NCBI GenBank assembly: GCA_047495785.1
Contig: JBLDXI010000015.1
Coordinates: 992,001-1,056,000 of the forward strand
DNA from: Lepidodermella squamata
Taxonomy: Eukaryota; Animalia; Gastrotricha
Length of the DNA: 64,000 nt
Direction of reading: 5' to 3'
Shown here in pieces: positions 17,550 through 38,856 of this stretch. How positions within the stretch are numbered: the stretch's first letter is position 1; each line of letters opens with the position of its first letter. A model generated the notes under the pieces. The model saw only the letters and a program-made list of their open reading frames with translations, was not told the origin of the DNA and did no database searches. A program made the position numbers and the translations under genes.

Positions 17550-20500
17550 ATGAGTAAAAACTTGGAAAATTTGCCGCATCGCCTGTCGACGGATAGCGAG
17601 ACAAAAATCCGCGCGACCGGCTATAAATACGAGGCGGCACCCCTCGCCGTCATATCAACCAGCCCGTCGCTGGCAAGCAGCGTTGCCGATAACGCAAAAC
17701 CAAGCCCGCAACAGCGCGTGTCCGTTCACTCGAACAACTCGCCAACAACGCCCGAAAAACGGTACCACAACGTGAAAATAGCATCGGACGAAACTGTAGG
17801 CCTGTTGCCTGCTGTTGACGGCGATGATTCATCGTCGAAATGCCCGGCTGATGAGGACATGGTGGAGTCTACGTCGAAGGCTGCTTCGAAATGGCGGGCG
17901 CAGAATCGGCTGAAGAGCCTGCCGATAAGCCGGAATGTTATCAGTTTCAATAGCGAGAATTTGGATGAAAGTGACGGCGGGCATGAACGGCTGCTGGTCC
18001 TGCCCTCGACGCGGTCCTTACCTCTTCACCACAACGATAGCGCTAGCGAAATGGTAAGTGGAAAATTCTGGGTTTTTCTTTTAAATGTTGGAAAATTCGA
18101 GTAAAATTAATTGGAACCACATGCATTCGATGAGACCGAAGAGTTTAATGACCGAAAATTCACGAGATTGTCTGTGCAATTTATCTGGAAACCTTTCGTC
18201 ACTTGGACCTTTTCGCTGTTCGATCCTATTCATTTTCCCATTTAATATATTTTTCATGATTATTCCTCATTTTCGCAAATTTCTCAAGTAATTTTGGGGT
18301 TTTCTTTTTGGTGAATTTGTCGAAAGTTTTCATTTCAAATTTAGAATCTATTAGTACCTTTCCTTATTCTTAAGCAGGATCTTTTATTTTTAGGTTCCAG
18401 CATTAAATCAAAGCGTCATGGTTTTTTTCACTTTTCTCAGTTTTTTATTTTTGATCGATACTCTCTCGCTCTCCTTCTATGATTTCTTTTAGGTTTTTTT
18501 TCTCATCGGAGTATCCAGGTACCATCAGGTATAAGGTAGAAATGTTTTCAATACTGGTTTCCGAAATTTCCGATATCGAATAATCTCTGATTTCCGAAAT
18601 CGATACTTGGAAACGATATTCCACTGAAAAATGGCCGAAAATGAGGCTAAGAGCTCATTTCATTGAAAACTTTCAAGGAGCTTATAGGGGCCGCCAGGGT
18701 TAGCTGTCAAGGTACCCTGCTGTGGTGCAAAAGAAAGCTCTCTATCGGTTATATACAGGCTAAAAAGATATAATTAGACGCTATATAGGGGACGCTTGAA
18801 ATTTGAAACTCAAAAAGCTTACGGGATAATTACTGCGCTTTAACCCTAAATTAAGGGTGTCAATTTAGCATTATAGCGAATTTTTTTCTTTCGCGTTAGA
18901 AATCAAATACGGAAAAAATAGCATTTTCAGGCTTATTTTTCCTAATATTTTGAATTCTGAATTTCTAATTTCTAATTTTACCAATAATGGCTGAAAATGA
19001 CAATACTTCGACTTTTGCGGATAATTTTTTGTTCTACGTTCCAAAATCGCAGCATCGATTTTCACCGGTAATTAAAGAATTTTTATTATTCGTGATTTTT
19101 TCTCCAATTCAATCCTTATAATTATCGCTTCAAAAATAATCCGCAAAATTGTCCAAATCTAGGAAAATCTCTAATAAATCCGTAAATGTGCCATTTTTTA
19201 TCCATTGTTTATACCGATTAGAATAGGAGCGTAGGAATTTTCCGCTCTAGTTGTGCTGGCGATTTTTATTATACTCCCGTTTTATCAATTACAACATGTA
19301 TGTACAAACCTAGAATATTTCGCTTTTGTTCCAATAATAAAACTGACGGAATTAGACCAGCGGCGATTTTTACGATCTCCTTTACAACATTCGATATGCA
19401 AATGTAGAAACAATATAGCTGTACAAGTATATTGTTATTGCTCACCCTGCCCGCCGGCCGCTACTGTGTTTACGCGCATCATCCTTAACAATAAAATAAC
19501 AATAATAGTAATGATAGCAAAACAGTCAGATATATCAGCTGGTATGGTTCATTCACACCTGGTGGTTACAAATATATCGGTGTTGGAAAAATCATTTTTA
19601 CGCCAACATTATTCTCAAATTTCTCGTCTTTTGTCAACATAAAAATGTCTTTTTTTATTTTCCGTGCATATTATTTATTGTTATTTATCATCACGAGCTT
19701 TCAACGAAATGATTTCTGCTATTGTTATATTGAGAGGTCGCGACATAACCGCAATAACAACATTTGTAAAGTGATCCGTTATATATATCATATATATCAT
19801 AAATCATAATAATATATCATAAAAAATACGTAAAAAAATAGTGCGCGTGCGCGGGCCAAAAATATGCGCACGCGCGCGCGCGCGCTTTTTATTGCGTACA
19901 CTCTCGAAACGGTAACAACACGCGTCTACTTAATATACAATACTCATCTACCGGGGTACTTTTCGCTTTTCATCACTTGATGATTATGATAGGGCCCGGT
20001 TATACGCGCGTATAGTAGAGTCGATATCATCTCTCGCCACCCTCATATATATAGCCTCCGTATAAAAGCGCGCATCGTTGCTATATATAGCCCAAGTTGG
20101 TAGTAATGCACGCGAGATAGCCTTCGATTAGCCGCCCAACGGCTACATAACTGCTCGCTGCCAGTCACGAACGCCAGTTTAGCCACTTTCGGTCTAATAA
20201 AAACAAGCCAAACTAGGCGCTTAGCATAACAATGGAGGTAATAAAGCGTAGAGAGAACAAGAAGATAGATTACACGGCGTTTTTTCCTCCAGCCTACGAT
20301 GATTTTTTTCGCCGCCATCATGCGCGCCAGTCCTCTCCAGCCCATCAATAATTTGTTAATCTGAAAAATAGTGGCGTCCTTACAGGGACAAAGCGTGGCC
20401 TGACGTCACGAGCTTTCATCTCATAATAGCCCCTCGCGAGCTATGAGACTAGCAGGGTGCTCAGGGCACTTCTCACTATTGATTCCCATATTATATGTTG

Positions 20501-23500
20501 GAAAAACATCATCATTAATATCCGCTAAAATTACATGATGGCAGAAATTGTCCTCAGCCGCTGTTATATTTACATTTTTCACTCAAGATAAAAGTACAAC
20601 TGGACATTTGGTGTAAAATTTACGTAAATTCATTCGCATCTCGCCCGTCGACATGTTTCAAAATCCGGCGACGATTAACCAGATGTTCGCCAACCAGGTA
20701 TTTAATTTCATCATTTCCAGGCCGTTTAGCCGTTAGACAATTGCATATATGAAATAACTAGGTTTCCCTTTTATTTCTTTTCACACTGACTTGACTAATT
20801 CGAATAATTTTCCACTATTAGCACAATAAAGCTGACAGCCTGCTACCACAGGTAGTCTAGCGGTAATTATACCTCGCATAATTATCGTTCATCTATAAGC
20901 ATGTTTCTTAAATTATCGCGTGATGATACTTTTTCACCTGATTAAAGGCGCTATAACTAATGCAGGATTTAGCTACGCGTAGGGAATATATTTACCCCAT
21001 ATGTTTGCATAGATTGTTACTTCGTTAGATTGCTCTCATCGTAAGCTTTCAAATGACACCCAACTTGATATGGTTTCAAGCTATTTTTGATCGCGTCAAG
21101 TTGAAGCGCGCATCAAATAGTGCGTGACCTAATTTTGTAGTGCGCATCTTTTTATTACATACTGCAATAGCCATTTTTTATTACACCTTTTTATTACTAT
21201 AACCCGCTAATTATTTATAGGTCTACTTATTTTTTGACTGATGACCCCATTTAAATTAAAGCAATGAAGCTAACCTAATAACCGTAGTACTTGTTGACCT
21301 GAGGCTGATTACTACCGGTTGCTCGCCGAAATGAATGCGCCTACTGACCTCCATCAACACGTACCTTTGACTTCGATAATTCAAACCGCGCCTAATAATA
21401 ACCCGAACAGTAGCCCGTATTTGAGCAATCTTCAAAATAGACACGTGTTCTTGTCTAATAAACAGGAGGAGACGTCGGTATCCGGGCTCGGCGGCCAGCC
21501 GCAGTACTTCGAACCGGTTCGCGGCTCGGCGAGTCGCGCGTCTCGCGTCACAATACCCGGTATGCGAAATGCGTACGGCGAGGCCGGTTCGCAGCAAAAT
21601 GTCACCTTTGCGACGCATTCGCAAAGCGGTGGTGCAGGGTACGGCGCGCACTACATGCCGCCACATCAGAGCAGTCTTAGCGACTCAATAGGCGATAACT
21701 ATTACGACGCCTCACCGGCACCTCTTGAAAAAACCTATCATCAAATTAGTACAGAACAGGTAAATGAACGACTCGGTTACAGTAGAATGCTTGTGGTTCC
21801 AATTTGGTTCAAGAGTTTCATGTTCTCAGTTTGCTTTTCGACCTCTTTGGTTTTTTCGACCGACGCGTCTCCATAGCAACGGTTGCTAAGGAGATGTACT
21901 TGGACGCTATACCCTAGTAACCGAACATTCATAGATCATTGGTTGCTAGGGAAAAGCCTCCACTTGATTCCCATAGCTACCAATCACGTTGCTATGGAAA
22001 AGCGTCATTTTCCTTTCCTTAGTAACGCTTTGTATCACTATTCCAGAAATCGAGAGAAAGCGATGAAGCGCAGCAGCAACAAGCAGCTACGTTGATGAAG
22101 AACCTATCTATGTTCCTTGCCGCTTCCGGAGCAAGTTTGGGTGCCGCTCAAGCAAAACCGGCTTCAAGTAGTAGAGGTGCGCCCCATGACACCGAGAAAA
22201 CGAAACGCACGACCAAAACCTATGTCGAAGTTCGAGTTGTCTTTCTGAAAATCGGCGAAATCGATACGCTGAAAGAGGTGCGGTTATCAATTTGCTTTCG
22301 AAATTAGTAAATTTCTGTTTTTTTGTAGCAATATTCCGCAGATGTTTACATTCAGTCGAGATGGCGCGAGCCGACCCTCGATCAAAAATCCCCGGACGAG
22401 TTGAAGACGGTGGATTTCACCAAACTGTGGAGCCCGTGCCTATACATAGAAAACGCACTGTCCGAACAGAAAGATTCCAGCTGGCAGTCGGCAGCTCTCA
22501 ACGATCTCGGTGAAGCGTTTGTTTCGGAGCGCCGCAAACTGCGCGGCGTCTTCCTAGAAAACCTCGAGCTGCAAAACTTCCCCCTCGATGTGCAAGACCT
22601 GTCTGTTACGGTTGTGTCCGAGCGACCCGATTCCGATGTCGAGCTCATACCGGACGAGGAAGATCCGAGTTCGGTCAACATAGGCACGTTTGCCGACGAA
22701 CAGGAGTGGAAGCTCTACCAACACGTTGAAGTTACGAAAAAAACCGTCAAGGTCGAGTTCGCCAACCAGCAACGTCAGCATTCAGCCATTCAAGTTACTT
22801 GCCGGGCTGCTCGAAGGCCTGGTTATTTCTACTACAATGTTTTTCTTGTCATGGTGAGTAAAAACAGACGATTGCCTACGCAACCCCGAGGGACACTTTG
22901 CCGTAGCAACACGGGGCAGAAACGCACTCAACAATGTAGATATTAGATGATTGCATCTTGCATTTCGGGTCTGAAAGTTTAGGGAGGCTATGGAAACCCC
23001 AAAGGACGCCTTTTTATAGCATCGAGGCTCCTAAGCATTCTCAATGATGAGCGCCCCGGGTTCAAAATGCTCTCGTTGCTAAGGACAATCAAAAGAACGC
23101 CATTCCATAGCAACCAAGTTTTTAGGTACTCTTAACTTGGCTTGGGGTGGTAAATCTAAGCATATTGATTAAATAACATGCGGTTGCTAAGGAGAATGAT
23201 TAGACGCTTTATCATAGCAACAGATGATATTGCAGCTGAAAACTGACTTGTGGATTATTTTTTCCAGTTCTTCATCAGTTCCATCTCGTTCGGCACTTTC
23301 TCCGTCGACTGCAGCCTGCCGCAAAACCGGCTTCAGTTGTCATTCACCCTACTGCTGACTTCGATCGCGTTCAAAATGGTTATAAATCAAAGCTTGCCCA
23401 AAATTTCCTACCTGACGTACATGGACAAGTACGTGCTGATGTCGCTCGTCTTCCTCGTGCTCATATGCGTGTGGCACTCTATTGTGCCGTCGTTGTGTGC

Positions 23501-25459
23501 CTCTAAAGAAGACGATTCGTTCTACACGAACAAAACTGAGCTTTACGTCATACTTGGCTTCTTCCTGCTCTACCTTATCGGGCACATTCTATTCGCAGCC
23601 TTCGTCTACATCCACGCCTGGAAACGGCGCCTTCAAATGTCGCAGAAGGACCGCGAATTTCGAGTACGTTCCCATCTTCGCAAGCTTTGTCCAAAATAGA
23701 AGGGAGACCAGATAGAAAGCGAAAAATTGAAGACCAAAGAAGACAAAAACGCGCTTTGATTAATCAAATTTTATGTTGCTTTTTTTATTTTCAAATTTCC
23801 ACCACCCAACTGCCATTCCTAAAACCGCGCTGCTACCTTTTCAACCAACTAAGTTTCCGTAACCCATTGATTTTGAACAACTAACACTGCTGCTGTTTCA
23901 AACGACCCTGTGTTTCCACCCTTTCTGTATGAATCATTGTTCGGCTATATTATAGTTATACGTCGGTGCGAAGCTACTGCAACAAGTAGCGTCTATGAGT
24001 AAACGTAGACGCTAAATCGTTAACTGCTGTGTAGGAGATGGCTATATAAAATGGTAACACGTCGTGATGTGCCGCAATTTTAATTCATTAAAAAATCACT
24101 CGGTTGCCGAATGGATGGCCTACGTTTATTTTTTTGCGCCAATTTATCCACCTAATTTTTTTGTTTAATCAGACAATGACATTTTATAGCCGGTTAATGA
24201 CGCTCTTCTGATCAACAAATGCTTGGAAATAATTTTTCCGCATTGCGTTTAAATTTAGTTGCCATTTTTTTAAACAGTTGTTACGATGAATTTGGAAATA
24301 TTCAGCTTTGCTTATTAATCTCTAACAGGATCTATTTTGCAACATGAACAATTTTCAAAATTCAAAGGTGGGGCTAGATAGTCGAGGATAATCTGTAGAC
24401 CCCAATGATTGGCATGGTTTCATAATTAAATTTTTATAGGTGATAGGGTTATGCCGTTTCTAGAAAAACACTCATATGTAAAGAGAGTTAATGGCATTTG
24501 CAACTAAGTCCCCCCATTTTTGAACGCCTGCCCCCATTCACGCCACATGCATTAGATGTGGTGGGTCCATTTAAGGATAGCGAACCTGATCTTTTGGGTA
24601 GCGCATGTTAAGCGAAATACCCCTTCATTTTCAAAGATTCGAATTTTGAATCTTGATATGCTACATATTTTTGAAAATCATGTTATTTGCAAATTCGTAA
24701 AACTTTGGTTTTCAGGTTCCAAAGCCTGGGGCAAAATTGGGCGAATTTAACTGGAATTTTCTGGGGCTCGGCTTGCCATTATTATATTTCATCAGTTACC
24801 AAACAAACGAAGGCAATACAATGAAAACAGACCATGAAGTCTTTAATCGATTTCTTGAAACTTGGATTAAAATTTCCCGATAAATAATCCATAAGTTACA
24901 GAATCATCAAGTTTCAGGTTTTTCGGAGATTCTCAGCAATTCGTATTTTCTTTCGGTGACATTACAGGAGAAGAGTCGCTTTCGTTTCTTACGAATTTTT
25001 TTATTTAAAGCTAATAGCGAAAATTATGGAGCACGCTGTAATTGGGCTAAAGGAAGCATTTTTGTTTGAAACGTGATTTTTGTGACAGTGCTTTTTTAAC
25101 AGTCTTTTTTGAGCATTTTCTTGCCAAATTCGTCATTACAAACTTTTTACGCACAGGCACGGGCTGAATTTTACGGCGCTGGCACTTCAAGTCGGGACGC
25201 TGATCATCACCATTCGCAGCAAAAAAGCCATCACCATCAACAGCAGCATCATCACCATCAGCAACGCCACAGCAAAAACATCAGCAACGACCAGTATTCC
25301 GGCGCATCGGCAACTTCGGACACGTTGAAGGACATGAGCAGTAGGGCGCCGTTGACTGGCCTAGCTGCCTTGCAACAACTGCAACAGCCATCTCACCACT
25401 CGCCGCCTGCCTACGGCAATCCTATCAACAACAACCGGTCGCCGAGCAGGAGAAATTGA
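17550..25459 (+). CDS. Cys-less pentameric ligand-gated ion channel subunit 1 (exons 17550-18053 and/or 21331-21759; 22047-22277; 22329-22853; 23268-23663; 25157-25459)
   Basis: VEVRVVFLKIGEIDT, ADVYIQSRWREP, LWSPCLYIEN, Pro-loop LQNFPLDVQDL without cysteines, QEW, pre-M1 RAARRPG, four TM helices with LPKISYLTYMDKY. All junctions are phase 0 GT-AG; the 5' exons are less certain. Confidence 0.88.
21867..23221. promoter_or_regulatory. Intronic cluster of ~14 RFX/X-box-like motifs
   Basis: GTCTCCATAGCAAC at 21867 matches GTHNYYATRRNAAC exactly. GTTGCTA(A/G/T)GG or its complement recurs at 21882, 21909, 21942, 21967, 21988, 22014, 22871, 22897, 22984, 23075, 23101, 23183 and 23208. Confidence 0.65.
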
Positions 25460-26327
25460 GCGAAACTGCCAACTTCAGGTGCTTCTTACCGTTATAGCAG
25501 ACACACAGCCATTTACCTGGTGACAAGTGAAAATTGCGTTAGAGTTTAGGGCAATCGATCGCAATTAGAGGGCAATCGATCGCCCGCAGATCAAAGCTCA
25601 TTGTCAAAGGATTCTCGTTTTACAAGAGGCTTATAGGCTAGCAGGATTCTGGGGATTCTCTTCCAAAGATCGATTTCCTATAAAATTTTTAGGAGCGATT
25701 GTCTACTATCAATTTCGGAGCAGGAAAAGATTCAAACTTCAGCAAAGTTCGAAAGTAGGGAGTAGCAATTTGATGGCTAGTTCTGAGCATCTTTAAAATT
25801 TCACTTGCCACCGGGCATACTACTGCTTCTCTTGAGATATGAAAAAACACACAGCCGCTTCCGATTGTATGTACGATTATATATATTTTCTCTGTATATA
25901 TAGGATGTAAATATTCATGCTGTCAAATTGTTTATCATTGTGCCTGATTATTCATATTTGCATTGAGCTACTTAACCCTGTGTGCATGAAAGCGCTATTA
26001 CACCTGTGCAGTTCCAGTAGTTGTCGCTTTAGTGCCAGAGCTTTTCAATATTACTATTATTCGATATTATTATTATAATTGATGATATTTTTAAAAATTG
26101 AGCGCGCCGTTCATTATTAAAAACGTATGCGCTGATTCTCTGAAGGTTTCGGGCCGAATTAAATGATATTCTGCATACTTTTTGTATAATTGCGAATAAA
26201 ATCACGAATGAGAACTGCCCGAGTACTTCAAGGTCATTCTTTTCCTCAGACGGATTAATCAGCCTGATTAGTAATTAAAAATCGCGACTCAGTCCACTCC
26301 TCGGTCAGTTCGTGTAATTTGTCCGCT

Positions 26328-28544
26328 ATGTCCTTGATCGGAACTATGCTCAAGTCAAAATCGAACTTGATCGCACCTATAATTCCTGAAAATTTCGCAG
26401 CTGGTAGATCGGATACCGAAGCCGAAGGTAAGAGCCCCGCGCCAAGCAGTAAAAAATCACGCCGGAAAGGTGCTGCAGTGACGTCAGATAAAATTCGCCG
26501 GCCTTTCAAAACCATAATCGAAATTCGGGTGGTTTTCCTTAAAATTGGTGAAATCGACACCTTAAAAGAGGTTAGCCCTTATTTTTGTTTCGAGCCTTAT
26601 ATTTCAAAGCTCTTAACAGCAATATTCGGCTGATTTATTCATTCAATCTCGCTGGCGCGAACCGTCTCTTGACGGCAAAACTCAGGACGAAGTGAACCAA
26701 ATCGATCTGATGAAGCTGTGGTCCCCAAATCTTTACATCGAAAACATCTTACAGGAGCAGAAGGACTCTAGCATGCGAAGTGCGAGTGTTGACAGTGAAA
26801 GCGGCGAGGTTCATGTCACAGATCGCCGGAAACTTCGCGGCGTTTTCCTGGAGAACCTTGAACTCTACACTTTTCCGTTCGACATTCAGGATTTGTCGAT
26901 AACGATTGTTTCTGAACGAACGGAGAATGAAGTCGAGTTGGTTCTCGATGAGGAAGAACCGAGTTCTGTCTACGTCGGAGCCTTCGCCGATGCTCAGGAG
27001 TGGCTTTTGTACAGAAGGGTTGAAGTTATTAAGAAAAGCATCCAGATGGAAATGAGCTCGCAACAACGGCCTCAATCTGCCCTAACAGTCATGTGCCGAG
27101 CAGCTCGACGGCCTGGCTACTTCCTTTTCAATGTCTACCTCGTTTTAGTAAGTCAGGATTACCTGAATTAAGTTGATTATTCTGTTGATCCATTTAGTTT
27201 TTCATCGGATCCGTGTCATTTGGTACCTTCCAAATCGACTGTAGCCTACCGCAAAATCGGCTCGCCCTTAGCTTCACACTGCTTCTCACCTCGATCGCTT
27301 TCAAAATGGTCATTAATCAAAGCCTGCCTAAAATTTCTTATCTGACCTATCTGGACAAGTATGTACTCACATCCTTGGTTTTCCTTGTTTCGCTCATCAC
27401 TTGGCATTCGTTCGTTCCGTCGTTGCTCGAGAATGATGCGGATGCGGCAAGGTTTGAGGCCGCCGTAGAGATTTACGTGCTGATAGGGTTCGGCGGGCTC
27501 TTCGTGGCCGGTCATTTGTTATTTGCGGCTTTCGTCTACTTCACAGTTTGGCAGAAACGGATTAGAATGGCTGCGTTGGATAAAGAATTCGAGGTAAGCT
27601 GTGTTGAAGTTATAAACACCAAAAATGGTAATCATCACTGCTATGCGATTGCAAGGAAACAGAATTTTAAATTCAGTTCAAATTCTGAAAAGTATAAGTA
27701 CTATCGGATTTGTTCACAATTAGTGTTGATCAATTTTGAGGAAAATCGTAGAGAATGAATCCAAAATGCTGTTGACAGTGGTGGGGTCCGAATTCCGCCC
27801 ATAGCTTCGCGCTCGAGCCGCTTTGAAACATGCCCGTATGCAGTGTTTACTGTGAATTTAACAAATTCGATAGATTCACGCTTCACCGCACACGGGCCGG
27901 CCAAGGTGTTGGTCTAAGCTCGGAGGAGAACAATGGGACCCAGCGCTATTGTTCAGCCGGGCACGGGTCTCTGGAATTGGGCCGCCGGGCTTGGGCCTCC
28001 TACAACAAACGCCCTACCCAATAGCTGTATGAAGTCCCAGCCAACAGCCGGCAGCCCGAGAGCAGCTCGAGCCCCAACAAAAGCAATAGCGAAATGAAGT
28101 ATCATGCCTGATGTGACATCTCGGAACTCGGAAGAACCCGAAAACTCAAAAGAATTGCTTTAGGGCCAATGTGATATCAAACGACCTAATTTTCCGATAG
28201 TTTTGGGGAAGAAAACCAATTTTATCCTTATCGAAAATGCTCAATTTTCGCCTATTTCGGGGTTTTGCTAATAGATTTGCCACTTGTCATACTTTTCACC
28301 GCAGAAGTTTTCTGTTGAATATTTCCGCAACGACTTTCTCATTATATCTTCGCCAAATGCAAAGCTTTTGAAATTTTGTTAGGCTCATCAACGTCCATCA
28401 ACTCGGCGCGAAAGCCTTCGATCGAACATGTCGGCCCCGGTGGCAACCACCGTCAGCAGCGTGAACATAATGATGAACGACGGCGAAACGCAATTGGGCC
28501 GCCCACTACGTGATATTGTACCGTCAACCATAGCGAGCGAATGA
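26328..28544 (+). CDS. Cys-less pLGIC subunit 2 (26328-26570; 26620-27147; 27198-27593; 28383-28544)
   Basis: Same motifs (LYTFPFDIQDL; DCSLPQNRLALSFTLLLT) and intron positions as subunit 1. Confidence 0.9.
27786..28080. mobile_element. Partial copy of the 975-1551 foldback element in intron 3 of subunit 2
   Basis: Shares AATTTAACAAATTC.ATAGATTCACGCTTCAC with the arms, and the spacer in reverse orientation (CCTACAAC.AACGCCCTAC…GAAGTCCCAGC). Confidence 0.75.
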
Positions 28545-28775
28545 TTGATTATTATCGTGCAGCCGTCCGCTTTTAATGTGAATGTCAATATTATGCCCCG
28601 CTTCGTATTTACGTGTGGCTTGCGTGTCTCGTAATAAATTGAAAGCTTTTAATGAACATTCGCGCGTTGATTGCTAGTAAAACAATTGCCAATTTCCATG
28701 TCATTGTTTAATCTGTCAATTGCATGATTTCCGCCGTTTCTTGCCAGTACACAATTTGATCTTTTTTACGCGGCT

Positions 28776-31321
28776 ATGAAAGACTGGGGTGAGCTAATGC
28801 AAGCAGCGGGTGTTGCCGGTCTTGTTTCACCCATCGGCATGCTTCGCAATAAAATGCGAACCAACCATGCTGCTAACGGATCTCGCCGTGGCTTTTTCCT
28901 GCCTATCGATGAAAAGGCTAAACGAGAGGCGAAAACAACTGTCGAGATTCGTGTGACCTTCCTAAAAATCGGGGAAATCGATACTTTGAAAGAGGTAATA
29001 ACTCCTAAGAATTTTCGACCTTCAACATTCTACAATCTTGATTTCCAAGCAATACTCGGCCGACGTTTTCATTCAAGCTCGATGGCGAGAGCCACTTTTG
29101 GATGGGAAAACCGAGCAAGAGCTGAATTCAATCAACTTCACCCAGTTATGGTCACCGTCGCTTTACATCGAGAACGTTCTCTCGGAACAGAAGGACTCCA
29201 CCTGGCAAATGGCGGCTCTTGACGAGCAGGATGAAGCATATGTAATCGAGCGGCGTAAAGTTCGAGCTTCGTTCCTCGAAAACCTCGAACTGCAAAACTT
29301 CCCGTTCGACGTACAAGACTTGTCGATTACAATAGTCTCTGAGCGAATTTCCGATGAAGTTGAGCTGGTTGAGGATGAAGCTGATCCTAGTTCGGTCTAC
29401 GTCGGGTCTTTTGCCGACGAACAGGAGTGGAAGTTGTACCAGCATGTGGATGTTACGACGAAGATGGTTCAGATTGATATCGGCTCGCAGCAACGAAAGC
29501 ATTCGGCAGTTCAAGTTACGTGCAGGGCAGCTCGCAGGACGGGCTACTTCTTCTACAACGTATTTCCCGTTTTGGTGGGTGATACGCTAGATTAACTGCA
29601 AAGCCTATACGGAGTTATTTAAAACTTTGTAGAAGGGTGTTAGGGGGATATCAAACTTCAAGAAGTGATTTGTCTTGCATGGTCTTGCATGGTGAAGTGC
29701 ATGGTTACAACCGAAAATTATACACAATATATTTGTTAAGGTTTTCAGTTGTCACTAATTGCCGACATATCTCTTACAGCTGAAATGTGGCTGTGTGGAG
29801 GAGTTGTTTCCCAAGATTCGAGATTTTCAGGACTCATCCTCTTCGGTTCACATGAATTAGATATAAATTTTCCATTAGCCATTAGATTAGCCATTTCGCA
29901 ACCATTTTTTAGAACCCTGCTAAATAGTGATTTCAACCAAGTTGATTCAGGGACCATAGATAACAGAGGTCACTACAGTCTCTCTGTCCGGGACAATATT
30001 TTTTCACATTTCACGTTCATTTAAAAATATAACAACTGAAACATTGTCAATATTAATACGCAAATATCCCGATTTATTTGTCAGAAAAAAATCAACTTAG
30101 TACAGCAAATGCATCTCGGGTCTTATTGATTTCTATCAAGAAGGAATTGCTGCATTGCATGTTTTCATCTTTTTGAAGTTCGGTTCAACGGATGGCAGTT
30201 ACGCTGGGGGATTTTTCGATAAAAATAGGAGCATTGCTCCTTAGAGAATAGTTCTTAGAATGGTCTCTATTATGATAATGTATTATGTACCATTTTATTT
30301 TTATACCTATATATTACTCGTTTGACCTATTTAAATTTTCCCGCTTTCCCGTCACATGCATGGCGGGCCATATAAAAGCTATCAGACCAGTGCAGACTTT
30401 TTGGAATAAGGCTCACTTTTGGCCTTATGTGGCGAAGTAATTTGCGGTGAGACGATGGGCAAGAAAAGTCACCGTTTTTACTTACTTTTCTGATGGAATA
30501 GAGTGACACCAAAAGTGCCATGTTTCCCGACTGGCGACTAGTGCCAACTCAAATCTCCACTCGCCAACAATCAAACCATTCGAATCCTCTTGTTACCTAG
30601 CATTTAGAATTAGATAATTAGTCTAGGATTCGCTGATGAAAATGCGACTTATTTTCTGAATCTGAAATATGAAATTGATATACTTCTTGTAGTTCTTCAT
30701 CTGTGCTGTGTCATTCGGCACCTTCCAAATCGAATGTACCTTACCGCAAAACCGCCTGCAGCTGACGTTCACGCTGCTGCTAACATCAATCGCCTTCAAG
30801 ATGGTCATCAATCAAAACCTTCCGAAAATCTCCTACCTAACCTACATGGACGTCTACGTCCTGTTGTCACTGCTCTTCCTCGTCCTCATGTGTGCTTGGC
30901 ATTCGATAGTTCCCATGATTTCTACTTTGCACGATAACAACCCTGAAGTTATGTTCGCTATTGAAGTCGCTGCAGTCACTGGATTTTTGGCCGTCTACGT
31001 TCTGGCCCATGTCGTTTTTGGTGCAATTGTCTACGTCAAAGCCTGGCGACGTAGGTTGGCAATGAGTCAGAAAGACAAAATTCTCAAGGTTTTAGCATTT
31101 TCACCCACATTTTACGGCTGAATTATGAGATTTTTTTCTAGACAAGGGCGCAACTTGAAATGGTGCTAGCTGATGGCGTTACGAGCATTTCAAAACGGCA
31201 TCGAGCAAGTCAAAAGGGGAAGCAGTCTATCAGTTTCACCATTGCTTCTATGAATGACGAAGACGCTTGCAGTCACGCTTCCTCGCATCACGCGCTTCAC
31301 AGTGTTATGGTTGCCGCATGA
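28776..31321 (+). CDS. Cys-less pLGIC subunit 3 (28776-28994; 29050-29574; 30693-31088; 31142-31321)
   Basis: LQNFPFDVQDL, ECTLPQNRLQLTFTLLLT; conserved phase-0 introns. Confidence 0.9.
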
Positions 31322-31738
31322 ATAATACTTCTTATTATATCGATCACTCAATTTTCCGAAAAATCACATCTATTTTATTGAATAAAAGCCGGGATAAGCC
31401 ACAGGTCTATTATCTTACTGCATATGAGGCCGGATATCAAGACTGGAGAAAGGCTCGCATGAATTGCGAAGGATTTCCTGTGATCATGCCAGCCGCAAAA
31501 CGCAGGCGAGGCATAACAAAAAAATACATCTTGATATCCCTTATAATTAAATGAGCATCGTGCTGTGCATTAGCAGCCGTGTGCATTGATGAAAAAAATC
31601 CACCGCGCATCAGTCTTTATACGATATTCCTTCTAATTCTGGTCGAATAAAACATATTTTGGCTTGCATCATAGCCATAATTAGTTGATAATCTTCAATC
31701 GCTACCTGATTGGAATTAAAAAACGGTGACTCGTTCGA

Positions 31739-33818
31739 ATGACGACGACTAATGTAAAATATTCGCTGGCGAACATGAGTGCGCTGGCGCAGGTCGCTAG
31801 ATCACTGGCTCCTATTGGCTTGGCACAGCGAAAGCTCACACCCAGACCTACTAGCATTGGCCCGAGACCTTCGAGCGCTGGACGCCGCGCAAGTTTCATG
31901 GCTGGGGAGCGAATGAAACGGAACATTAAAACTGTTGTCAGCATACGCGTTGTTTTCCTGAAAATCGGTGAAATCGATACTCTGAAAGAGGTAAGCTCCC
32001 TTCCAATCTGCAAATTAAGGGGAATACTCCTCAAATTACTGGGCGTTGTACAAATTTATTCTCTAAAATCACATTGAAATTAAAAAATTCAAACTGTACA
32101 GTTTTCGAGGTTAAAATAATTCCTGTGTTCCCATTACACTATTCAGCCTACTTCTTATTTTTCAGCAATATTCCGCTGATATCTATATCCAATCCCGTTG
32201 GAGAGAGCCACTTCTCGATGGCAAACCCGAGGCCGAGTTGCAGATAGCCGACTACCCACGATTATGGAACCCAAATCTGTATTGCGAGAACGTTTTATCG
32301 GAGCAAAAAGACAGCTCGTGGCACGTCGGTGTTTTGGACGAGCGAGGCGAGGCTTATGTCATCGAACGGCGTAAATTGCGTGGGACATTTTTCGAGAATC
32401 TCGAGCTGCAAAATTTTCCGTTCGACGTGCAAGACTTGTCGGTGAGCGTTGTCTCGGAGAAGGAGACCAGCGAGGTGGAACTTGTGCCGGATGACGATGA
32501 GCCGAGTTCGGTCTACGTCGGCGCGTTTGCTGACGAGCAGGAATGGCGGTTGTACGAGCATGTTGAAACGGCGAACAAAACGGTTAGCGTCGAGCTAGGC
32601 AGCGATAACAAGCAGCATTCCGGTATTCAAGTGACTTGCAGAGCTGCGCGGAGACCCGGTTATTTCTACTACAACATTTTCCCAGTTTTGGTAAGCTATA
32701 ACTTTTAGCTCGATGATAAATTTGCGGCGTTTCGAAAATTAAATGGAAAGTCAGATGATGCGGACGGGAGCCGAGGAGAACTAACATTGGAACCAAAAGC
32801 TAAAATATCCTACTTTCAATATGTTGATGGTTTATCGTACTAAGATTTGGGCTTAAGAAGTTCCAGTGCTGAATTTTAGCATTCTGCCTCTATATAACCT
32901 AGCCTTTGGTCCCTTCAACTTTTACTCACCTATATCTCTTAATAAGATATGATTTGATTTGGAGCCTAAATCCTTCAATCAATAATGTCCCACTTTTAGG
33001 AGACTATATCTATCAATTCAAATCACCGACTGTGATAAAGCATAAAAGATCCTTGGAATTGGAGTTTCCTAACAGAGTGAAGAGTGATCATAACATTCAG
33101 GTGTGGATAATATTTTGGATCAACGGGATTTTGGGGTTTGTTGAGTGCCACATTATTTGCCCTTGGGAACTGAATATTGAGACATTTTCAAGCCTAATTT
33201 TACCGCTTTATCTTTCAGTTTTTCATTTGCGCCGTTTCTTTCGGAACCTTTCAAATCGACAGCGCATTGCCACAAAACCGGCTTCAGCTAACCTTCACCC
33301 TGTTGCTGACTTCAATCGCCTTCAAAATGGTCATCAACCAAGCTCTGCCTAAAATATCCTACCTTACCTACATGGATATTTACGTGTTAATGTCTCTACT
33401 ATTTCTTGTGCTATTATGCGCCTGGCACTCGATAGTTCCTATGCTAACGTTCTTCAAAGGCAGTATCTTATTCGACCCTACAAATGTTGAAATCTACGTA
33501 GTTCTAGGATTTTTCCTGCTATTCCTATTCGGTCATTTGCTCTTCGTCGTTGCTGTATATAATCGAGCGTTTAAACGGCGTCTTTTGATGGCGCATAAGG
33601 ATCGAGATTACAAAAAGTCCGTCTCAGAACTGCAATGTGTCGTCGTTGATCCAGCTTCACAAGCTGATGGCGGGAAAGGACGGCGATCAAGCCGCTTCAA
33701 AACCGTCAACAGCCGCTTTTTGTCGAGCATTCAGGCTGATACTAGCGACGAAGGTCTTGCAACTGTGCACAGTGTAGCTTCTAACATGGCCATGCATAAT
33801 GCCGTATTTGGAAATTAG
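31739..33818 (+). CDS. Cys-less pLGIC subunit 4 (31739-31990; 32166-32690; 33219-33818)
   Basis: LQNFPFDVQDL, DSALPQNRLQLTF; lacks the post-M4 intron. Confidence 0.9.
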
Positions 33819-33962
33819 TATTATTCATAATAAAGCCATAATTAGTACTGTATTACTGTATTGGATATTTTAATAAAGCCGGATGAGTGCAAAGTCTGCA
33901 ATGTTAATCCACCGCTGCAGGGTGGCTCGATATGCGTTTTGAAAATCATTCTTGTCAAGAAA

Positions 33963-35687
33963 ATGCAAAATCCACCATCGGAAAATCCTGCTACTTCACC
34001 ATGGGGTCTGCTGCCCTTGTCTCCGGTCACTAAAGGGGCCCATCCGCCTCCTCCAACTCCAAGCAGGTCAGAAAGTGCTGACCTGAGATCACCGTCAGGG
34101 CTAGCTAAGCGCCACCTAACCCCTCTCGAGCTGTCGAAACGCTCTGGGAAAACATTGGTCGAGGTTCGAGTCGTATTTTTCAAACTAGGCGAAATCGACA
34201 CTGTTAAGGAGGTTTGAAAAACGCCTCTTTCCATCAAATCCGTGATATTTTGTATATCTATAGCAATTTTCTGCTGATATTTTAATTCAAACTCGGTGGC
34301 GAGAGCCGCTGCTGGATCAAAGGACTGAGTTCGATATCGAAGGATGTGATTTATCAAAGCTATGGAGCCCTCTCCTCTATATTGAAAACGCGTTGGTTGA
34401 GAGTAAGGATACCAGCTCGAAATCGGCGGCTGTCGACGAATCTGGAGCTGCTTGGGTTTTCGAACAGCGTAAAGTGCGTGGCAACTACCTGGAAAATCTC
34501 GAACTACAAGACTTCCCATTCGACGTTCAAGATCTCTCGGTGACCGTTGTATCAGAGAGGCCTGATACGGAGGTAGAGCTAATTCCGGATGCTGAAGACC
34601 CAAGTTCTATCTACGTCGGCGCATTTGCGGACGAACAGGAGTGGAGGCTGTACAAACATGTCGAGGTTCAGCGAAAATTCGTGAAGATCGAGCATGGCAG
34701 GCGGAAGAGGCAACATTCGGCCCTTCAAGTTACGTGTAGAGCCGCCCGGAGGCCTGGCTTCTTTTTCTACAACGTTTTCTTCGTGTTGGTGAGTAAATCT
34801 ATTGCAGACAGTTGTAGGCTACTTTCGAATTTATGTCTAAGGTATGTAGGTGGGGATGTTTCAACCCCTCGACGAGTTTCCATAAGAAGCTTGCTCTGTT
34901 TCTCCACCGATGTGCATATTTAGGCTGATTTAAACTTCCAGTCTCTCGAATTTTAACAAATTTGTGTCTAAGGTATGCACAAATGTATCGAAGGAGTAAT
35001 ATACGAGCGTTTTTCATTGCGTTGTCGGGTACATTATGTCCCTTGTGGTCTCCATTCTCCAATGATCTAGGAATTACTGAATTAGTCTAACGTATGAATC
35101 GGGTAATATCTGCGTTACGCAGCCTTTTTTAAATCTCCTTCCATCTATTTATTGTGATAACTTCTTCTTTCCAGTTTCTAATCACTTTCGCATCATTCGG
35201 CACATTTTCAGTTGATTGCAGCTTGCCTCAGAATCGGCTTCAGCTGAGTTTCACAACCATGCTAATCTTAGTGGCGTTCAAGATCGCCGTTAACCAATCG
35301 CTTCCAAAGATCTCTTATCTCACTTATACCGACGCTTACGTGCTCGCTTCCTTATGTTACATCGTCCTGTTATGTGTTTGGCACACGATAGCTTCCCAAA
35401 TTTGTCCCATCGAAAGGTTGCACTCGGCAAATGTCGACGTGGAGGTTTACGTTGTAGTAGCCTTTGCGGCGTTCTACATACTCTGGCATGCTGTTTTCGC
35501 CCTCGTCGTCTACACTCGAGCATGGCCTCGGAGGAACTTCATGGCTTTAAGGGAGCATGAGCTATTTCAGGCAAGTTTTTTACGGCAAGCCCATCAACTC
35601 ATTTTTGCTTATTCTTCTTTTATCAAGGATGGCTCTTCAATAGCATCTTCACCCTTCAGCGTTGTATCTGCGGATTTGAAGTATTGA
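33963..35687 (+). CDS. Cys-less pLGIC subunit 5 (33963-34211; 34264-34788; 35175-35570; 35628-35687)
   Basis: LQDFPFDVQDL, DCSLPQNRLQLSFTTML; the last intron is probably GC-AG. Confidence 0.88.
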
Positions 35688-35817
35688 TCGATACGAAATA
35701 ATTATAGAATAAAAAAGACGAATTTTGCGCAACTTTTTTTTAATAAAAATGATCCAAGATAATCCTGACTGATAGCGTCTAATTATACACCTGGACTCCC
35801 CTCGCTTGCCTATAGCA

Positions 35818-38800
35818 ATGCTAAAAAATAAGATTTCACAGCGAAAAATGTTCTGGCGGTGCTTTTCGAAGCGACAAGTAGCGCCGAGTAAGGCGGAAAG
35901 CGTGGCTCGAAGCCAGCCATCAATGCGACATTTCGCCGCCAGAATCGACTCACTACTTGAACGAACCCGGCGTCCTACAACCACAGTAGTCGATGTTAGG
36001 GTGGTTTTTCTGAAAATAGGCGAAATCGACACTCAAAAAGAGGTTTTTGTTCGACAATATGAAACCTGCCCTATCGATCTCAATTTTTATCCCTAGACTT
36101 TTTCCGCCGATGTTTTCATACAGGCCCGTTGGAGGGAGCCTGTACTCGACGGGCGAAGTCCTGCTTCCTTGGAATCCATCGATTTGTCCCAACTTTGGAA
36201 CCCGTCTCTTTACATTGAAAACGCAATGTCCGAGCAAAAGGAGAGCAAATGGCTAACTGCAGCTGCCGATGAACAAGGCCATGTATTCGTCTTCGAGCAG
36301 CGAAAATTGCGTGGTCTATTTTTCGAAAATCTTGAACTCGAGAATTTCCCGTTCGACGTGCAGGATCTTTCGATTACAGTCGCCTCAGAACGCCCCGTGC
36401 GAGAGGTGGAAATTGAGCCTAATACTGAAGAGCCTAGTTCGGTGTATGTTGGCGCGTTTGCGGATGAAAATGAGTGGAGATTGTACCAGCATGTTGAGGT
36501 GTCGTTTAAGACGATAACCTCGCAGCATAAGCAGCTGAAATCGAGGCACTCTGCCCTGCAAGCGACTTGCAAAGCTGCTAGACGGCCTGGATATTTCTTC
36601 TTCAATATTTTCCCAGTTTTGGTAAATTTAGGACATGTCCTTTCCAGTCAATCTAAGCTGTTTGCGTGAACATGAAAATTCTCCAGATGCATAAAGGATA
36701 TTTCATTTGGGGTTTCTATAATATGAATTCCGATGAAATCGTATAACTCCCAGAAAAAATGTGCCTTCAAAAAATCGTATCCGCTTAAAAGCATGATTAA
36801 ATCCCAAATTTGTATGGAAAATCAATTCAACCGAAAAATATGAACTAGAAGGGAATTAAATGTTGTAGAAAATCCGGATCTTCTAGCTTTAAAAATAATT
36901 TTTGAACCTCGAACGGGAAGTTATTGCCCGCACTCGGCGATTTGTCTGCGATTTAGGCTTTGGCATGAAAAGCCGATATATCGATTTCAAATATCGATTT
37001 CACAAATCACGGATTTTTTCAACATTTAATATCTTTGAAACCAATTGCTGACAAATTTTCGATCGAAAAGAAAAAAAGCCGAAATCGAAACGAAATCTTA
37101 GAAAATGTGGGCTGGAACCTGAGTAATATTTCGCTAAATTATGGATAAATTCCAATAATAAATTTGAACTATCTTGGGTACGTTACCCAGCTCTGATTGG
37201 TCAAACTCAATATTTATATCTCATTATTCGGCAATCTTTCCCCTGTTAGTTCGATTTCTTCGAAAATTCAAACATTCGGAAAGGCTATTATTTTCAATTT
37301 TTCGAATATATCTTTCAATTTTAACGTCGAGTTCAATTTCGTTTCAATTTTCTTGCTTTTCAAGTTTTTGAATATCTTGAAAAAAATATTAGCAATTTTA
37401 TTCAAATTTTCAACCACTCAGAACTTGAAATTCTAAGAATCATAAAAAATTATGATAATTTAATATTTTTAATATTGTGAATATTGTAATTTTTCTTTCA
37501 GTTTTCGATAACAGTCGTTTCATTCGCGACATTCGCCGTCGATTGCGAACTGCCGCAGTCGCGCCTGCAACTCGTCATGATCCTCATGATGATATCGGTG
37601 ACCTTCAAAACGCTCATCAACGCCAACATGCCGCACGTCGACTACATGACGTACATGGACAAGTACGTTCACATGTCCATGATTTTTCTCGTGTTACTCG
37701 GCGCCTGGCATGCGATTGCGGCTAAAATCTGCGTCGAAGGCCACGACACTGATGCGACCGGCGCGTTGTTGGGCAAATTTTCCGAGGGCCTCGTCGTAGC
37801 CGGGTTTCTTGCTGTTCACATCACCGCCCACGTAGCTTACGTCATTTCGGTTTATCGCAACGCGTGGCGCCGTCGCTATGAGGCAACCAAGAAAGATAAG
37901 GTATTCTACCCCAGCTTAACTTAGACTGGAATCGAACAAAAACCGAAAAAAGTAAAAAAAATGGAATTTAAAATTTCAATAATTTTTTGAAAGCTTTATG
38001 TGTGATTCATATTCCTGCAAAATTGTGGGCGTTGGAAAACCTATAAATACGTTTTTAGGTGAAAAATTTTGCAGAACTATACCTAAGGTTCCGCTAAAAT
38101 TAAGAATCAAAACGAAACTGCTAAAATCTCCAATCAAACAAATTCGTCCACACAATAATAATTCCCAGCTATCATAAAAACAATTTCAGGCTGTTTTAGA
38201 TCGAAAATATATCAAAATTTAATATTAATTTTCGAAAGTTTTACTTCTCCATTTACCTTGAAGGAAATTTTTCAAAATAAGATAAATATTGACAAATTCC
38301 TTAAGCAAATTTCAAATTCCGCTATAAATGTCGGCTTTATTTTTAAATGATGAAATTTCAGCAAACCAAAACTTTTTCCAGCGAAATTCTTTAATTTTAA
38401 ACTTGGCCATTTAGGAACAAATATCCGCGCCTCGGGCGAATGGTATTTTGGCTACGTTAGAAAAATTCTGGAATTCAAGGCAACTGGTACGATTTTACGT
38501 GAATCTAGAAAATTCCGGAAAATTAATAGTTACTTGAATAAGAACTATAAGAACAGTGAAATTAGAACTCCTATTTCGATATTACATGGCTAACAAATTG
38601 AAATTCGAATATTTCGATAACAATTACCAAAATTTACTCGGCGATATAGCAAAAATCTCTTGAAAATAATATTACGAAAATTACGAAAAACCGCACATCG
38701 CGATCGAATTTTCGTTTCCCGAGAAGGATTTCTTCAAGATCAAAGACTCAATCTTTCTGAAACTTGCTAAATAAATATTCTCAATCTATTTTTCAGCGAC

Positions 38801-38856
38801 TCAGAGGACGAGCGGACTCGACTGTATCCTACGCCAGCAGTGTAACTACTACTTGA
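35818..38856 (+). CDS. Cys-less pLGIC subunit 6 (35818-36042; 36097-36621; 37502-37900; probable 38415-38486 and 38797-38856)
   Basis: LENFPFDVQDL, DCELPQSRLQL, MPHVDYMTYMDKY. The 3' exons are inferred from phase-0 AG/GT sites; read-through to a stop at 37924 is the alternative. Confidence 0.82.

What the first reader, a model, noticed from the sequence alone, without database searches (positions are those of the whole stretch)
17550..38856. Possible 'inside-out' pentameric channel family with a cytosolic ligand-binding domain
Seen, in all six subunits: (a) no hydrophobic signal peptide in any modelled first exon, the N-termini being polar, basic and S/P-rich; (b) no Cys-loop disulfide; (c) basic clusters right after M4 (AWKRR, WQKRIR, AWRRR, AFKRR, AWPRR, AWRRR); (d) short, mostly acidic M3-M4 loops (KEDDSFYTNKTE with an N-x-T sequon, ENDADAARFE, HDNNPE, EGHDTD). 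Kinase-type motifs occur in the termini of several copies (RRASF, RRES, RRSS, RRPT, RGRADS, SP/TP runs). Established: canonical pLGICs need a signal peptide and place the N-domain and C-terminus outside and M3-M4 inside. Inference: the positive-inside rule and these motifs fit the opposite orientation, i.e. a channel gated from the cytosol or acting in an organelle. Counter-evidence: non-conserved sequons occur in the beta-sandwich of subunits 3 and 4, and undetected upstream signal exons are possible.
Basis: partly seen in the sequence, partly recalled or inferred. Interest (0 to 1): 0.92.

Follow-up and report, generated by a model that had tools for sequence, protein, structure and literature searches.

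The report
Probable inside-out pentameric channel genes
Six neighbouring genes encode relatives of neurotransmitter-gated channels that lack the export signal, so their "ligand-binding" domain most likely faces the cell interior, which would be an unreported way for this channel family to work.

Summary
Window 22.0-37.9 kb carries six tandem + strand genes, 50-68% identical. Each has three core exons and encodes a pentameric ligand-gated channel (pLGIC) subunit. None has the Cys-loop cysteines. All have a 17-22 residue acidic M3-M4 loop and a basic cluster after M4.

RNA contigs confirm three introns. A related genome differs by 29 synonymous and 2 conservative changes, so the genes are expressed and constrained.

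They belong to the known but uncharacterised "Cys-less" pLGIC clade of spiralians (Jaiteh 2016; Johnson 2023).

The inverted-topology reading passed the in-silico tests I could run, one of them only marginally:
- About 228 homologues were checked; five have a hydrophobic N-terminal stretch, and the one traced is an ORF-calling artefact.
- Five transcript-like contigs have closed upstream reading frames with no signal sequence.
- Lys+Arg averages 12.1 on the ligand-domain side against 3.4 on the other side (95 of 95 proteins).
- The ligand-binding domain is poor in glycosylation sequons, while the long flatworm M3-M4 loops are rich in them.

No paper I found proposes this topology. It remains inference; confidence is about 0.65.

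The parts
22095..22277 (+). gene 1, core exon A: polar N-terminal stretch plus strand beta1 (...VEVRVVFLKIGEIDTLKE). Counted from the first ATG; a phase-0 acceptor-like site lies at 22046/22047.
   Evidence: donor GAG|GT at 22277/22278
22329..22853 (+). gene 1, exon B: rest of the beta-sandwich, Pro-loop (FPLDVQD), pre-M1 RRPG, first half of M1
   Evidence: (Pfam Neur_chan_LBD)
23268..23699 (+). gene 1, exon C: second half of M1, M2, M3, acidic loop with NKT, M4, AWKRR tail, stop codon
   Evidence: (Neur_chan_memb)
26328..26570 (+). gene 2, exon A
26620..27147 (+). gene 2, exon B
   Evidence: (Neur_chan_LBD 28.5 bits, above the cut-off)
27198..27758 (+). gene 2, exon C (WQKRIR tail). A strong donor-like GAG|GTAAGC at 27593/27594 may end the exon earlier.
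28776..28994 (+). gene 3, exon A
29050..29574 (+). gene 3, exon B
30693..31121 (+). gene 3, exon C (AWRRR tail)
31739..31990 (+). gene 4, exon A (contains RRASF). RNA contigs match from 31792 on, directly after a cag| site, and carry 30 unmatched letters before that point.
32166..32690 (+). gene 4, exon B
   Evidence: spliced RNA joints 31990>32166 and 32690>33219, both GT..AG
33219..33818 (+). gene 4, exon C (AFKRR tail, 81-residue C-terminal tail with RRSS). AATAAA or ATTAAA hexamers lie 14 and 57 nt after the last coding base.
33963..34211 (+). gene 5, exon A. The conserved motif upstream of this ATG suggests that coding starts near 33919.
   Evidence: (joint 34211>34264)
34264..34788 (+). 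gene 5, exon B
   Evidence: 15 synonymous and 2 conservative differences from the related genome
35175..35687 (+). gene 5, exon C (AWPRR tail). Poly(A) signals lie 24 and 58 nt after the last coding base.
35818..36042 (+). gene 6, exon A (contains RRPT). An acceptor-like ctatag| sits 2 nt before the ATG.
36097..36621 (+). gene 6, exon B
37502..37924 (+). gene 6, exon C (AWRRR tail)
Unverified, and it has no hydrophobic core.
21319..21876 (+). polar ORF upstream of gene 1, a possible N-terminal exon. Unverified.
25109..25459 (+). His/Gln-rich ORF between genes 1 and 2. It could be a terminal exon of either gene. Unverified.

Best explanation
The region holds six tandemly duplicated, expressed and selectively constrained genes. 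[quoted passage not shown]

Shown:
- the pLGIC fold;
- intact coupling and gate residues (Pro-loop FPxD, pre-M1 Arg, M2 0' Arg, 9' Leu, M2-M3 Pro);
- absence of the Cys-loop disulfide;
- absence of any signal peptide or extra anchor helix, here and in relatives.

Inferred: without a signal sequence, the 200-900 residue N-terminal part stays in the cytosol. M1 then inserts as an N-in anchor. The four helices place the M1-M2 loop and the short acidic M3-M4 loop on the exoplasmic or luminal side. The strongly basic helix that continues from M4 returns to the cytosol.

The channel is therefore upside-down relative to every characterised pLGIC. Its beta-sandwich sensor and wide vestibule face the cytosol, and the narrow -1'/-2' end of the pore faces outside or into an organelle.

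Gating would come from an intracellular signal acting on the subunit-interface pocket. Which signal is not known. The disordered N- and C-terminal tails are available for cytosolic regulation. Whether the protein sits in the plasma membrane, in cilia or in an organelle cannot be told from sequence.
For: Gene models and six-way alignment.

Expression and constraint: spliced RNA contigs at 99% identity confirm introns 31991-32165, 32691-33218 and 34212-34263. The related genome shows 29 synonymous against 2 conservative differences.

Fold: Pfam Neur_chan_LBD and Neur_chan_memb. The AlphaFold2 model of homologue P0016 has pLDDT 87.8 and pTM 0.78, with the M4 helix running on for about 25 residues. 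Foldseek top matches are GABA-A beta3, GlyR and ELIC at E about 1e-21. Invariant and near-invariant residues.

No signal peptide:
- Of 126 and 102 homologues with a Met start and an intact domain start, only about 5 have any hydrophobic N-terminal stretch. In 37 the domain begins within 30 residues of Met1.
- One of those exceptions, P0111, is an upstream ORF extension, because 50-odd relatives start MDELDK....
- Five transcript-like contigs have in-frame stops 4-52 codons upstream of the ATG and nothing hydrophobic in between.
- Positive control: the same measure scores known anchors and a signal peptide in this window at 2.3-3.45.

Charge: Lys+Arg averages 12.1 on the ligand-domain side against 3.4 on the other side, in 95 of 95 proteins, and in 89 of 95 when pre-M1 is left out. 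The 25 residues after M4 hold 8.0 Lys+Arg. The M3-M4 loop has net charge -1.25.

Glycosylation signature:
- The ligand domain has 0.28 sequons per 100 residues (50 observed, 82 expected). 58 of 95 proteins have none there, and four of the six window genes have none.
- Fourteen non-redundant long M3-M4 loops have 2.65 per 100 residues (44 observed against 23.3 +/- 4.2 expected; 0 of 2000 shuffles reach the observed count).
- Those loops also have Thr runs and Cys pairs.
Against: - No experiment bears on orientation, and I could not run a trained predictor such as SignalP or DeepTMHMM.
- I had no canonical or bacterial pLGIC sequences to use as a direct negative control for the charge count.
- Against the reversed motif S/T-x-N, the sequon excess in the long loops is only 44 to 28 (p = 0.076). 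Part of the excess therefore reflects local Asn/Ser/Thr richness.
- The long flatworm loops end in a Lys/Arg-rich amphipathic helix just before M4. It resembles the cytoplasmic MA helix of canonical receptors.
- The pre-M1 Arg pair is conserved in all pLGICs, so it says nothing about orientation by itself.
- True 5' ends of the window's own mRNAs were not seen. The 30 unmatched letters before 31792 were not printed.
- Some receptors without signal peptides do translocate their N-tails through the EMC route (PMC6269167, seen by title and abstract only).
Confidence: 0.65

Rival explanations
1. Canonical orientation after all. The beta-sandwich is exoplasmic and is translocated without a cleavable signal, with M1 acting as an N-out (type III) anchor, for example by an EMC-type route. 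The channels would then be ordinary extracellular ligand receptors on sensory neurons.
For: All characterised pLGICs have this orientation. Planarian homologues are reported in mechanosensory neurons, and their knock-down causes seizure-like movement (cited in PMC9874803), which fits a neurotransmitter receptor. The long flatworm loops contain an MA-like basic helix before M4. The reverse-motif control for sequons is only marginal.
Against: N-out insertion without a signal is established only for short, unfolded N-tails (established knowledge). Here the tail is a folded 180-residue domain plus 0-900 further residues, with a median extension of about 85. A 45-residue tail with 12 Lys+Arg would also have to cross the membrane. 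The domain is sequon-poor and has no conserved cysteine pair.
Confidence: 0.2
2. Gene-model artefact: real mRNAs carry an upstream exon with a signal peptide that neither the reader nor I detected.
For: Acceptor-like sites precede the first ATG in several first core exons (22047, 31793, about 33919). One RNA contig has 30 unmatched letters before 31792. A few random hydrophobic Met-ORFs exist between the genes, for example at 25917.
Against: Five independent homologue transcripts have closed frames upstream of the ATG. More than 220 homologues from many phyla, including NCBI-annotated models, lack a signal sequence. Genes 5 and 6 begin 50-150 nt after the previous stop codon and poly(A) signals, which leaves no room. 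The unmatched letters fit a spliced leader as well as they fit an exon.
Confidence: 0.04
3. Organelle import: the proteins are imported post-translationally into mitochondria or another organelle, so the ER topology rules do not apply.
For: The N-termini are polar, basic and Ser-rich in some copies.
Against: N-termini are not conserved in length or character. They range from 1 to 912 residues, many are acidic, and several begin directly at strand beta1. Sequon-rich, Thr-rich loops with Cys pairs point to the secretory pathway.
Confidence: 0.04
4. Decaying or non-channel copies: the array is a set of pseudogenes or scaffolding proteins that no longer gate ions.
For: Ligand and ion selectivity are unknown. 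The canonical aromatic residues of binding loops A and B are replaced.
Against: All frames are intact. There are 29 synonymous against 2 non-synonymous differences from a relative. Transcripts are spliced. The gate and coupling residues are invariant across 57-95 family members.
Confidence: 0.03

Closest known systems
'Cys-less' Pro-loop receptors of invertebrates and protists (Jaiteh, Taly & Henin 2016, PMC4795631); schistosome 'Cys-less' LGICs (Johnson et al. 2023, PMC9874803)
   Same: Same family by sequence. The best hits are Capitella, Lottia, oyster, Lineus, rotifer, Macrostomum and Schistosoma proteins at 40-69% identity over exon B. They share the FPxD loop without cysteines, the short M3-M4 loop in most members, and an uncharacterised ligand.
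   Different: Nothing places the window genes outside this clade. They are a six-gene tandem expansion of it. Both papers treat the N-terminal domain as extracellular, and neither mentions signal peptides or topology. The inverted reading is new relative to them.
Prokaryotic pLGICs ELIC and GLIC
   Same: No Cys-loop disulfide, a minimal M3-M4 loop, and no large intracellular domain. ELIC is among the best structural matches (TM-score 0.82 normalised to ELIC). NCBI names many family members 'cys-loop ligand-gated ion channel-like'.
   Different: From established knowledge, the bacterial proteins have signal peptides and a periplasmic domain, and end just after M4. The family here has no signal, has a basic post-M4 tail (median 45 residues), and often has long polar N-terminal extensions.
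Canonical metazoan Cys-loop receptors (GABA-A, glycine, nicotinic, 5-HT3)
   Same: Same fold and the same coupling and gate residues. The top Foldseek matches are GABA-A beta3 and GlyR. The M2-M3 motif LPKISY resembles that of anionic receptors.
   Different: The Cys-loop cysteines, the signal peptide and a conserved glycosylation site are all absent. The M3-M4 loop is 17-22 residues rather than 70-250. The charge bias is opposite to what the canonical orientation requires.
Families with inverted membrane orientation relative to their structural kin (insect odorant receptors and PAQR receptors versus GPCRs; the glutamate-receptor pore versus K+ channels). Analogy from established knowledge only.
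   Same: A conserved membrane fold used upside-down, so that the sensor domain faces a different compartment.
   Different: There is no homology. For pLGICs no inverted member has been described in the literature I could search.

Membership tests
pLGIC / Pro-loop receptor superfamily | N-terminal beta-sandwich followed by four transmembrane helices | tested here: met
   Pfam PF02931 and PF02932 on the exon translations. AlphaFold2 model of homologue P0016 (52% identical over exon B), pLDDT 87.8. Foldseek E about 1e-21 to GABA-A, GlyR and ELIC.
pLGIC / Pro-loop receptor superfamily | Pro-loop F/YPxD motif with an invariant proline | tested here: met
   FPFDVQD or FPLDVQD in all six genes. Pro and Asp are invariant in 57-95 relatives.
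pLGIC / Pro-loop receptor superfamily | Coupling and gate residues: pre-M1 Arg, M2 0' Arg/Lys, 9' Leu, M2-M3 loop Pro | tested here: met
   RRPG before M1, the R of PQNR, the L of TLLLT, and LPKISY in all six genes. These positions are 97-100% conserved in the family.
pLGIC / Pro-loop receptor superfamily | Assembly as a pentamer that conducts ions on ligand binding | not testable with these tools
   Only a monomer prediction was available, and no functional data exist for this clade.
Canonical metazoan Cys-loop receptors | Disulfide-bonded 13-residue Cys-loop | tested here: not met
   Leu or Phe and Leu stand at the two cysteine positions in all six genes.
Canonical metazoan Cys-loop receptors | Cleavable N-terminal signal peptide | tested here: not met
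   No hydrophobic core in any candidate N-terminus of the six genes. It is absent in about 223 of 228 relatives. Upstream frames are closed in five transcripts. The heuristic was validated on known signals in this window.
Canonical metazoan Cys-loop receptors | Large cytoplasmic M3-M4 domain and a short extracellular C-terminus | tested here: not met
   The loop is 17-22 residues and acidic. The post-M4 tail is 18-81 residues and basic.
'Cys-less' eukaryotic clade (Jaiteh 2016; Johnson 2023) | Eukaryotic pLGIC that lacks the loop cysteines and whose nearest relatives are spiralian or protist Cys-less sequences | tested here: met
   The nearest proteins come from Capitella, Lottia, oysters, Schistosoma, Macrostomum and rotifers, and Atlas neighbours include diatoms.
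'Cys-less' eukaryotic clade (Jaiteh 2016; Johnson 2023) | Placement inside that clade on a tree that includes canonical and bacterial pLGICs | not tested
   I could not obtain canonical or bacterial sequences for an outgroup.
Prokaryotic pLGICs (ELIC/GLIC type) | Signal peptide and a periplasmic ligand-binding domain | tested here: not met
   The genes are eukaryotic, spliced and lack a signal sequence.

The most novel reading that the evidence does not exclude
The whole 'Cys-less' clade of eukaryotic pLGICs (spiralians, xenacoelomorphs, probably diatoms and other protists) is built upside-down. It would be a family of pentameric channels gated from the cytosol by a second messenger or metabolite, in the plasma membrane, in cilia or in an organelle. 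That would be a pLGIC counterpart of CNG channels or IP3 receptors.
Probability: 0.55. Interest if true: 0.9.

Novelty: new variant of a known kind. Interest (0 to 1): 0.8.

Why it matters
Every pLGIC studied so far senses a ligand outside the cell or in the periplasm. If this clade is inverted, the best-known fast-neurotransmitter receptor fold also serves as an intracellular-ligand-gated channel.

That would change three things:
- how its orphan members should be de-orphanised: with cytosolic ligands and inside-out patches, not bath-applied transmitters;
- how the eight schistosome members proposed as drug targets should be screened;
- how the early evolution of the superfamily is read.

The test is cheap. 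The schistosome M3-M4 loop carries up to eight sequons, so a glycosidase shift or a tag-accessibility assay would settle the orientation.

Tried and rejected
- **Concatenated subunits.** Genes 4-6 are packed tightly and several phase-0 acceptors exist, so I asked whether the array is one concatenated polyprotein. RNA contigs show no joint between genes. Genes 4 and 5 have their own stop codons followed by poly(A) signals. I dropped this in favour of separate, possibly trans-spliced, messages.
- **A fourth exon.** GT lies at the same codon after M4 in genes 1, 2 and 3, GC in gene 5, and GT three codons earlier in gene 6. However, homologues align through the read-through sequence of gene 1. Left unresolved.
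- **Missing terminal exons.** tblastn of homologue N- and C-extensions against the window found only the post-M4 motif.
- **Cytosolic domains fused to the extensions.** Pfam on ten long members found none. The one DUF4706 hit in the leech model is probably a merged neighbouring gene.
- **A subfamily with an N-terminal anchor as an internal control.** The only candidate, P0111, proved to be an ORF-extension artefact.
- **Bacterial or canonical control sequences.** tblastn against plasmids found nothing. The search with P0344 returned only P0344 itself.
- **Signal-peptide exons between the genes.** Only a few chance hydrophobic Met-ORFs turned up.
- **Literature.** Five searches found no statement on the topology of this clade.

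Full report
**What is in the sequence.**
Between 22.0 and 37.9 kb the + strand carries six paralogous genes.
- Each has three core exons joined by GT..AG introns of 50-980 nt.
- Exon A encodes a variable polar stretch and strand beta1 (VEIRVVFLKIGEIDTLKE).
- Exon B encodes the rest of a beta-sandwich, the loop FPFDVQD, the pre-M1 motif RRPGYF and half of M1.
- Exon C encodes the rest of M1, then M2, M3, a 17-22 residue loop, M4 and a tail.
- The cores are 50-68% identical.
- Both Cys-loop positions hold Leu or Phe.
- The M3-M4 loops have a net negative charge.
- The 25 residues after M4 hold 4-10 Lys+Arg.

**The genes are real.**
Contigs of an RNA run from the same species (99% identity) are spliced exactly at 31990>32166, 32690>33219 and 34211>34264. 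A DNA run of a relative (mostly 90-95% identity) differs at 31 listed coding positions. Of these, 29 are synonymous and two are conservative (I>V, K>R).

I could not see the 5' ends. One RNA contig begins to match at 31792, directly after a cag, and carries 30 unmatched letters before that point, but the tool did not print them.

**What family it is.**
- Pfam gives Neur_chan_LBD and Neur_chan_memb at or just under threshold.
- An exhaustive profile search with exon B of gene 4 found 968 relatives.
- The named relatives are spiralian: Macrostomum, Schistosoma, Rotaria, Helobdella, Pinctada, Capitella, Lineus, Octopus, oysters and Lingula. Many are labelled 'cys-loop ligand-gated ion channel-like'.
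- This is the 'Cys-less' clade of Jaiteh et al. 2016 (PMC4795631) and Johnson et al. 2023 (PMC9874803).
- An AlphaFold2 model of a full-length relative (P0016) is confident (pLDDT 87.8, pTM 0.78). It matches GABA-A beta3, glycine receptors and ELIC at E about 1e-21.
- The invariant residues are those of the ligand-domain/pore coupling interface and the gate. A working gated channel is therefore likely.

**Test 1: is a signal sequence really missing?**
- I took every relative with a Met start and an intact start of the domain (126, 102). In each I measured the most hydrophobic 8- and 19-residue windows upstream of strand beta1.
- Only about five have anything resembling a signal or anchor.
- One of them, P0111, is an upstream ORF extension. 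More than fifty of its rotifer relatives begin MDELDK... 17 residues before beta1.
- In 37 proteins the domain starts within 30 residues of Met1.
- Five independent intron-free contigs from other species have in-frame stop codons 4, 4, 13, 34 and 52 codons upstream of the ATG, with nothing hydrophobic in between.
- The same measure scores four type II glycosyltransferase anchors and a prohormone signal peptide in this very window at 2.3-3.45. The channel N-termini score at most 2.1.
- No extra transmembrane helix precedes the domain.

**Test 2: charge.**
In 95 non-redundant complete relatives, the side carrying the beta-sandwich (pre-M1, M2-M3 loop, first 25 residues after M4) holds 12.1 Lys+Arg on average. 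The other side (M1-M2 and M3-M4 loops) holds 3.4.
- The beta-sandwich side is higher in 95 of 95 proteins.
- It is higher in 89 of 95 when the universally conserved pre-M1 arginines are left out.
- The tail after M4 has a median of 45 residues with 12 Lys+Arg.
- The model shows this tail as a straight continuation of the M4 helix.

By the positive-inside rule (established knowledge), this predicts C-in. With four helices it also predicts N-in, which agrees with test 1.

**Test 3: marks of the secretory lumen.**
- The beta-sandwich has 0.28 sequons per 100 residues (50 observed, 82 expected from shuffles).
- 58 of 95 proteins have no sequon there. Four of the six window genes have none, and the two that do share no site.
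- There is no conserved cysteine pair in the domain.
- Flatworm members have M3-M4 loops of 44-172 residues. Fourteen non-redundant loops carry 44 sequons (2.65 per 100) against 23.3 +/- 4.2 expected, and 0 of 2000 shuffles reach that count.
- The same proteins show no excess in the domain, the N-extension or the tail.
- These loops also have Thr runs and paired cysteines.
- A stricter control, the reversed motif, gives 44 to 28 (p = 0.076). The excess is therefore suggestive, not decisive.

**Against the reading.**
- The long flatworm loops end in a basic amphipathic helix before M4 that recalls the cytoplasmic MA helix.
- I had no canonical or bacterial sequences for a direct negative control.
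- No trained topology predictor was available.
- No experiment exists.
- The kinase-type motifs are not conserved between paralogues and carry no weight.

**How it most likely works.**
Shown: a pLGIC fold with an intact gate and coupling interface, no export signal, and a reversed charge bias.

Inferred:
- The N-terminal part stays cytosolic.
- M1 inserts N-in.
- The short acidic M3-M4 loop is exoplasmic.
- The basic post-M4 helix lies on the cytosolic face, where it could meet acidic lipids.
- The sensor domain is therefore cytosolic and gating comes from inside the cell.
- The ligand is unknown. Binding loop C is short and basic (K/R-x-H-S), and a conserved E-x-R-R/K-x-K/R-G strand precedes the Pro-loop. 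This would suit an anionic ligand, but that is speculation.
- Planarian homologues are reported in ciliated mechanosensory neurons (cited in PMC9874803). A ciliary or sensory role is possible.

**Novelty.**
The genes are new members of a described family. The orientation is not discussed in either paper on the family, nor in any of the papers found in five full-text searches. Subscription literature was not searched.

I rate the inverted topology at about 0.65, the canonical orientation by an unconventional route at about 0.2, and artefacts at a few per cent.

Noticed in passing
window 33816-33965, 35685-35820, 31790-31795, 22040-22050: Genes 4, 5 and 6 are packed like an operon. Poly(A) signals lie 14-58 nt after the stop codons of genes 4 and 5, and the next gene starts within about 50-150 nt. 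An acceptor-like site sits 2 nt before the ATG of gene 6. Phase-0 acceptors precede genes 1, 4 and 5 with no partner donor in sight. One RNA contig has 30 unmatched letters before 31792. This fits spliced-leader trans-splicing, possibly with a leader-donated AUG. Other first-stage notes on this genome suggest the same.
   Followed up: partly
window 40728-40781 (- strand), inside the Hsp70 ORF 39048-41069: The long Hsp70 ORF reads through an in-frame 54-nt intron (AAG|GTATGT...CACAG|GTC), which adds 18 spurious residues (CYNFHPC...). It shows the about 50-nt intron size typical of this genome.
   Followed up: yes
window 36850-37049 (intron between exons B and C of gene 6): In the related genome's contigs, depth jumps to about 930 against about 70 elsewhere, and many loose ends fall at 36976-37018. 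This indicates a short high-copy repeat inside the intron.
   Followed up: no
window 23661-23666, 27591-27599, 31086-31091, 35568-35573, 37898-37903: A donor-like GT lies at the same codon, 15 residues after the Trp that ends M4, in genes 1, 2 and 3. Gene 5 has GC there, and gene 6 has GT three codons earlier. This may be a further 3' intron, or simply a conserved Val codon.
   Followed up: partly
homologues P0263, P0256, P0251 (molluscs); P0012, P0226, P0266 (flatworms): The extreme N-termini are conserved within phyla (MASVAYNFMVVD... in gastropods and bivalves; MSINFNKLFIQD... in trematodes and cestodes), although the rest of the extension is disordered. This may be a targeting or interaction motif. 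It is not a signal peptide.
   Followed up: no
window exon A of genes 2-6, e.g. 28833-28862, 31811-31840, 35797-35826: A short motif (S/A/L)-P-I-(G/A)-(M/L)-L-(K/R)-N-K is shared by the paralogues upstream of beta1. In genes 5 and 6 it lies partly upstream of the first ATG, so their coding sequence probably starts further 5' than the ATG-based models.
   Followed up: partly
protein P0344 (metagenomic, 336 aa): This is a distant Cys-less pLGIC fragment with three sequons in its beta-sandwich and a 10-residue tail. It looks like a conventionally oriented relative, but no kin were found for it.
   Followed up: partly
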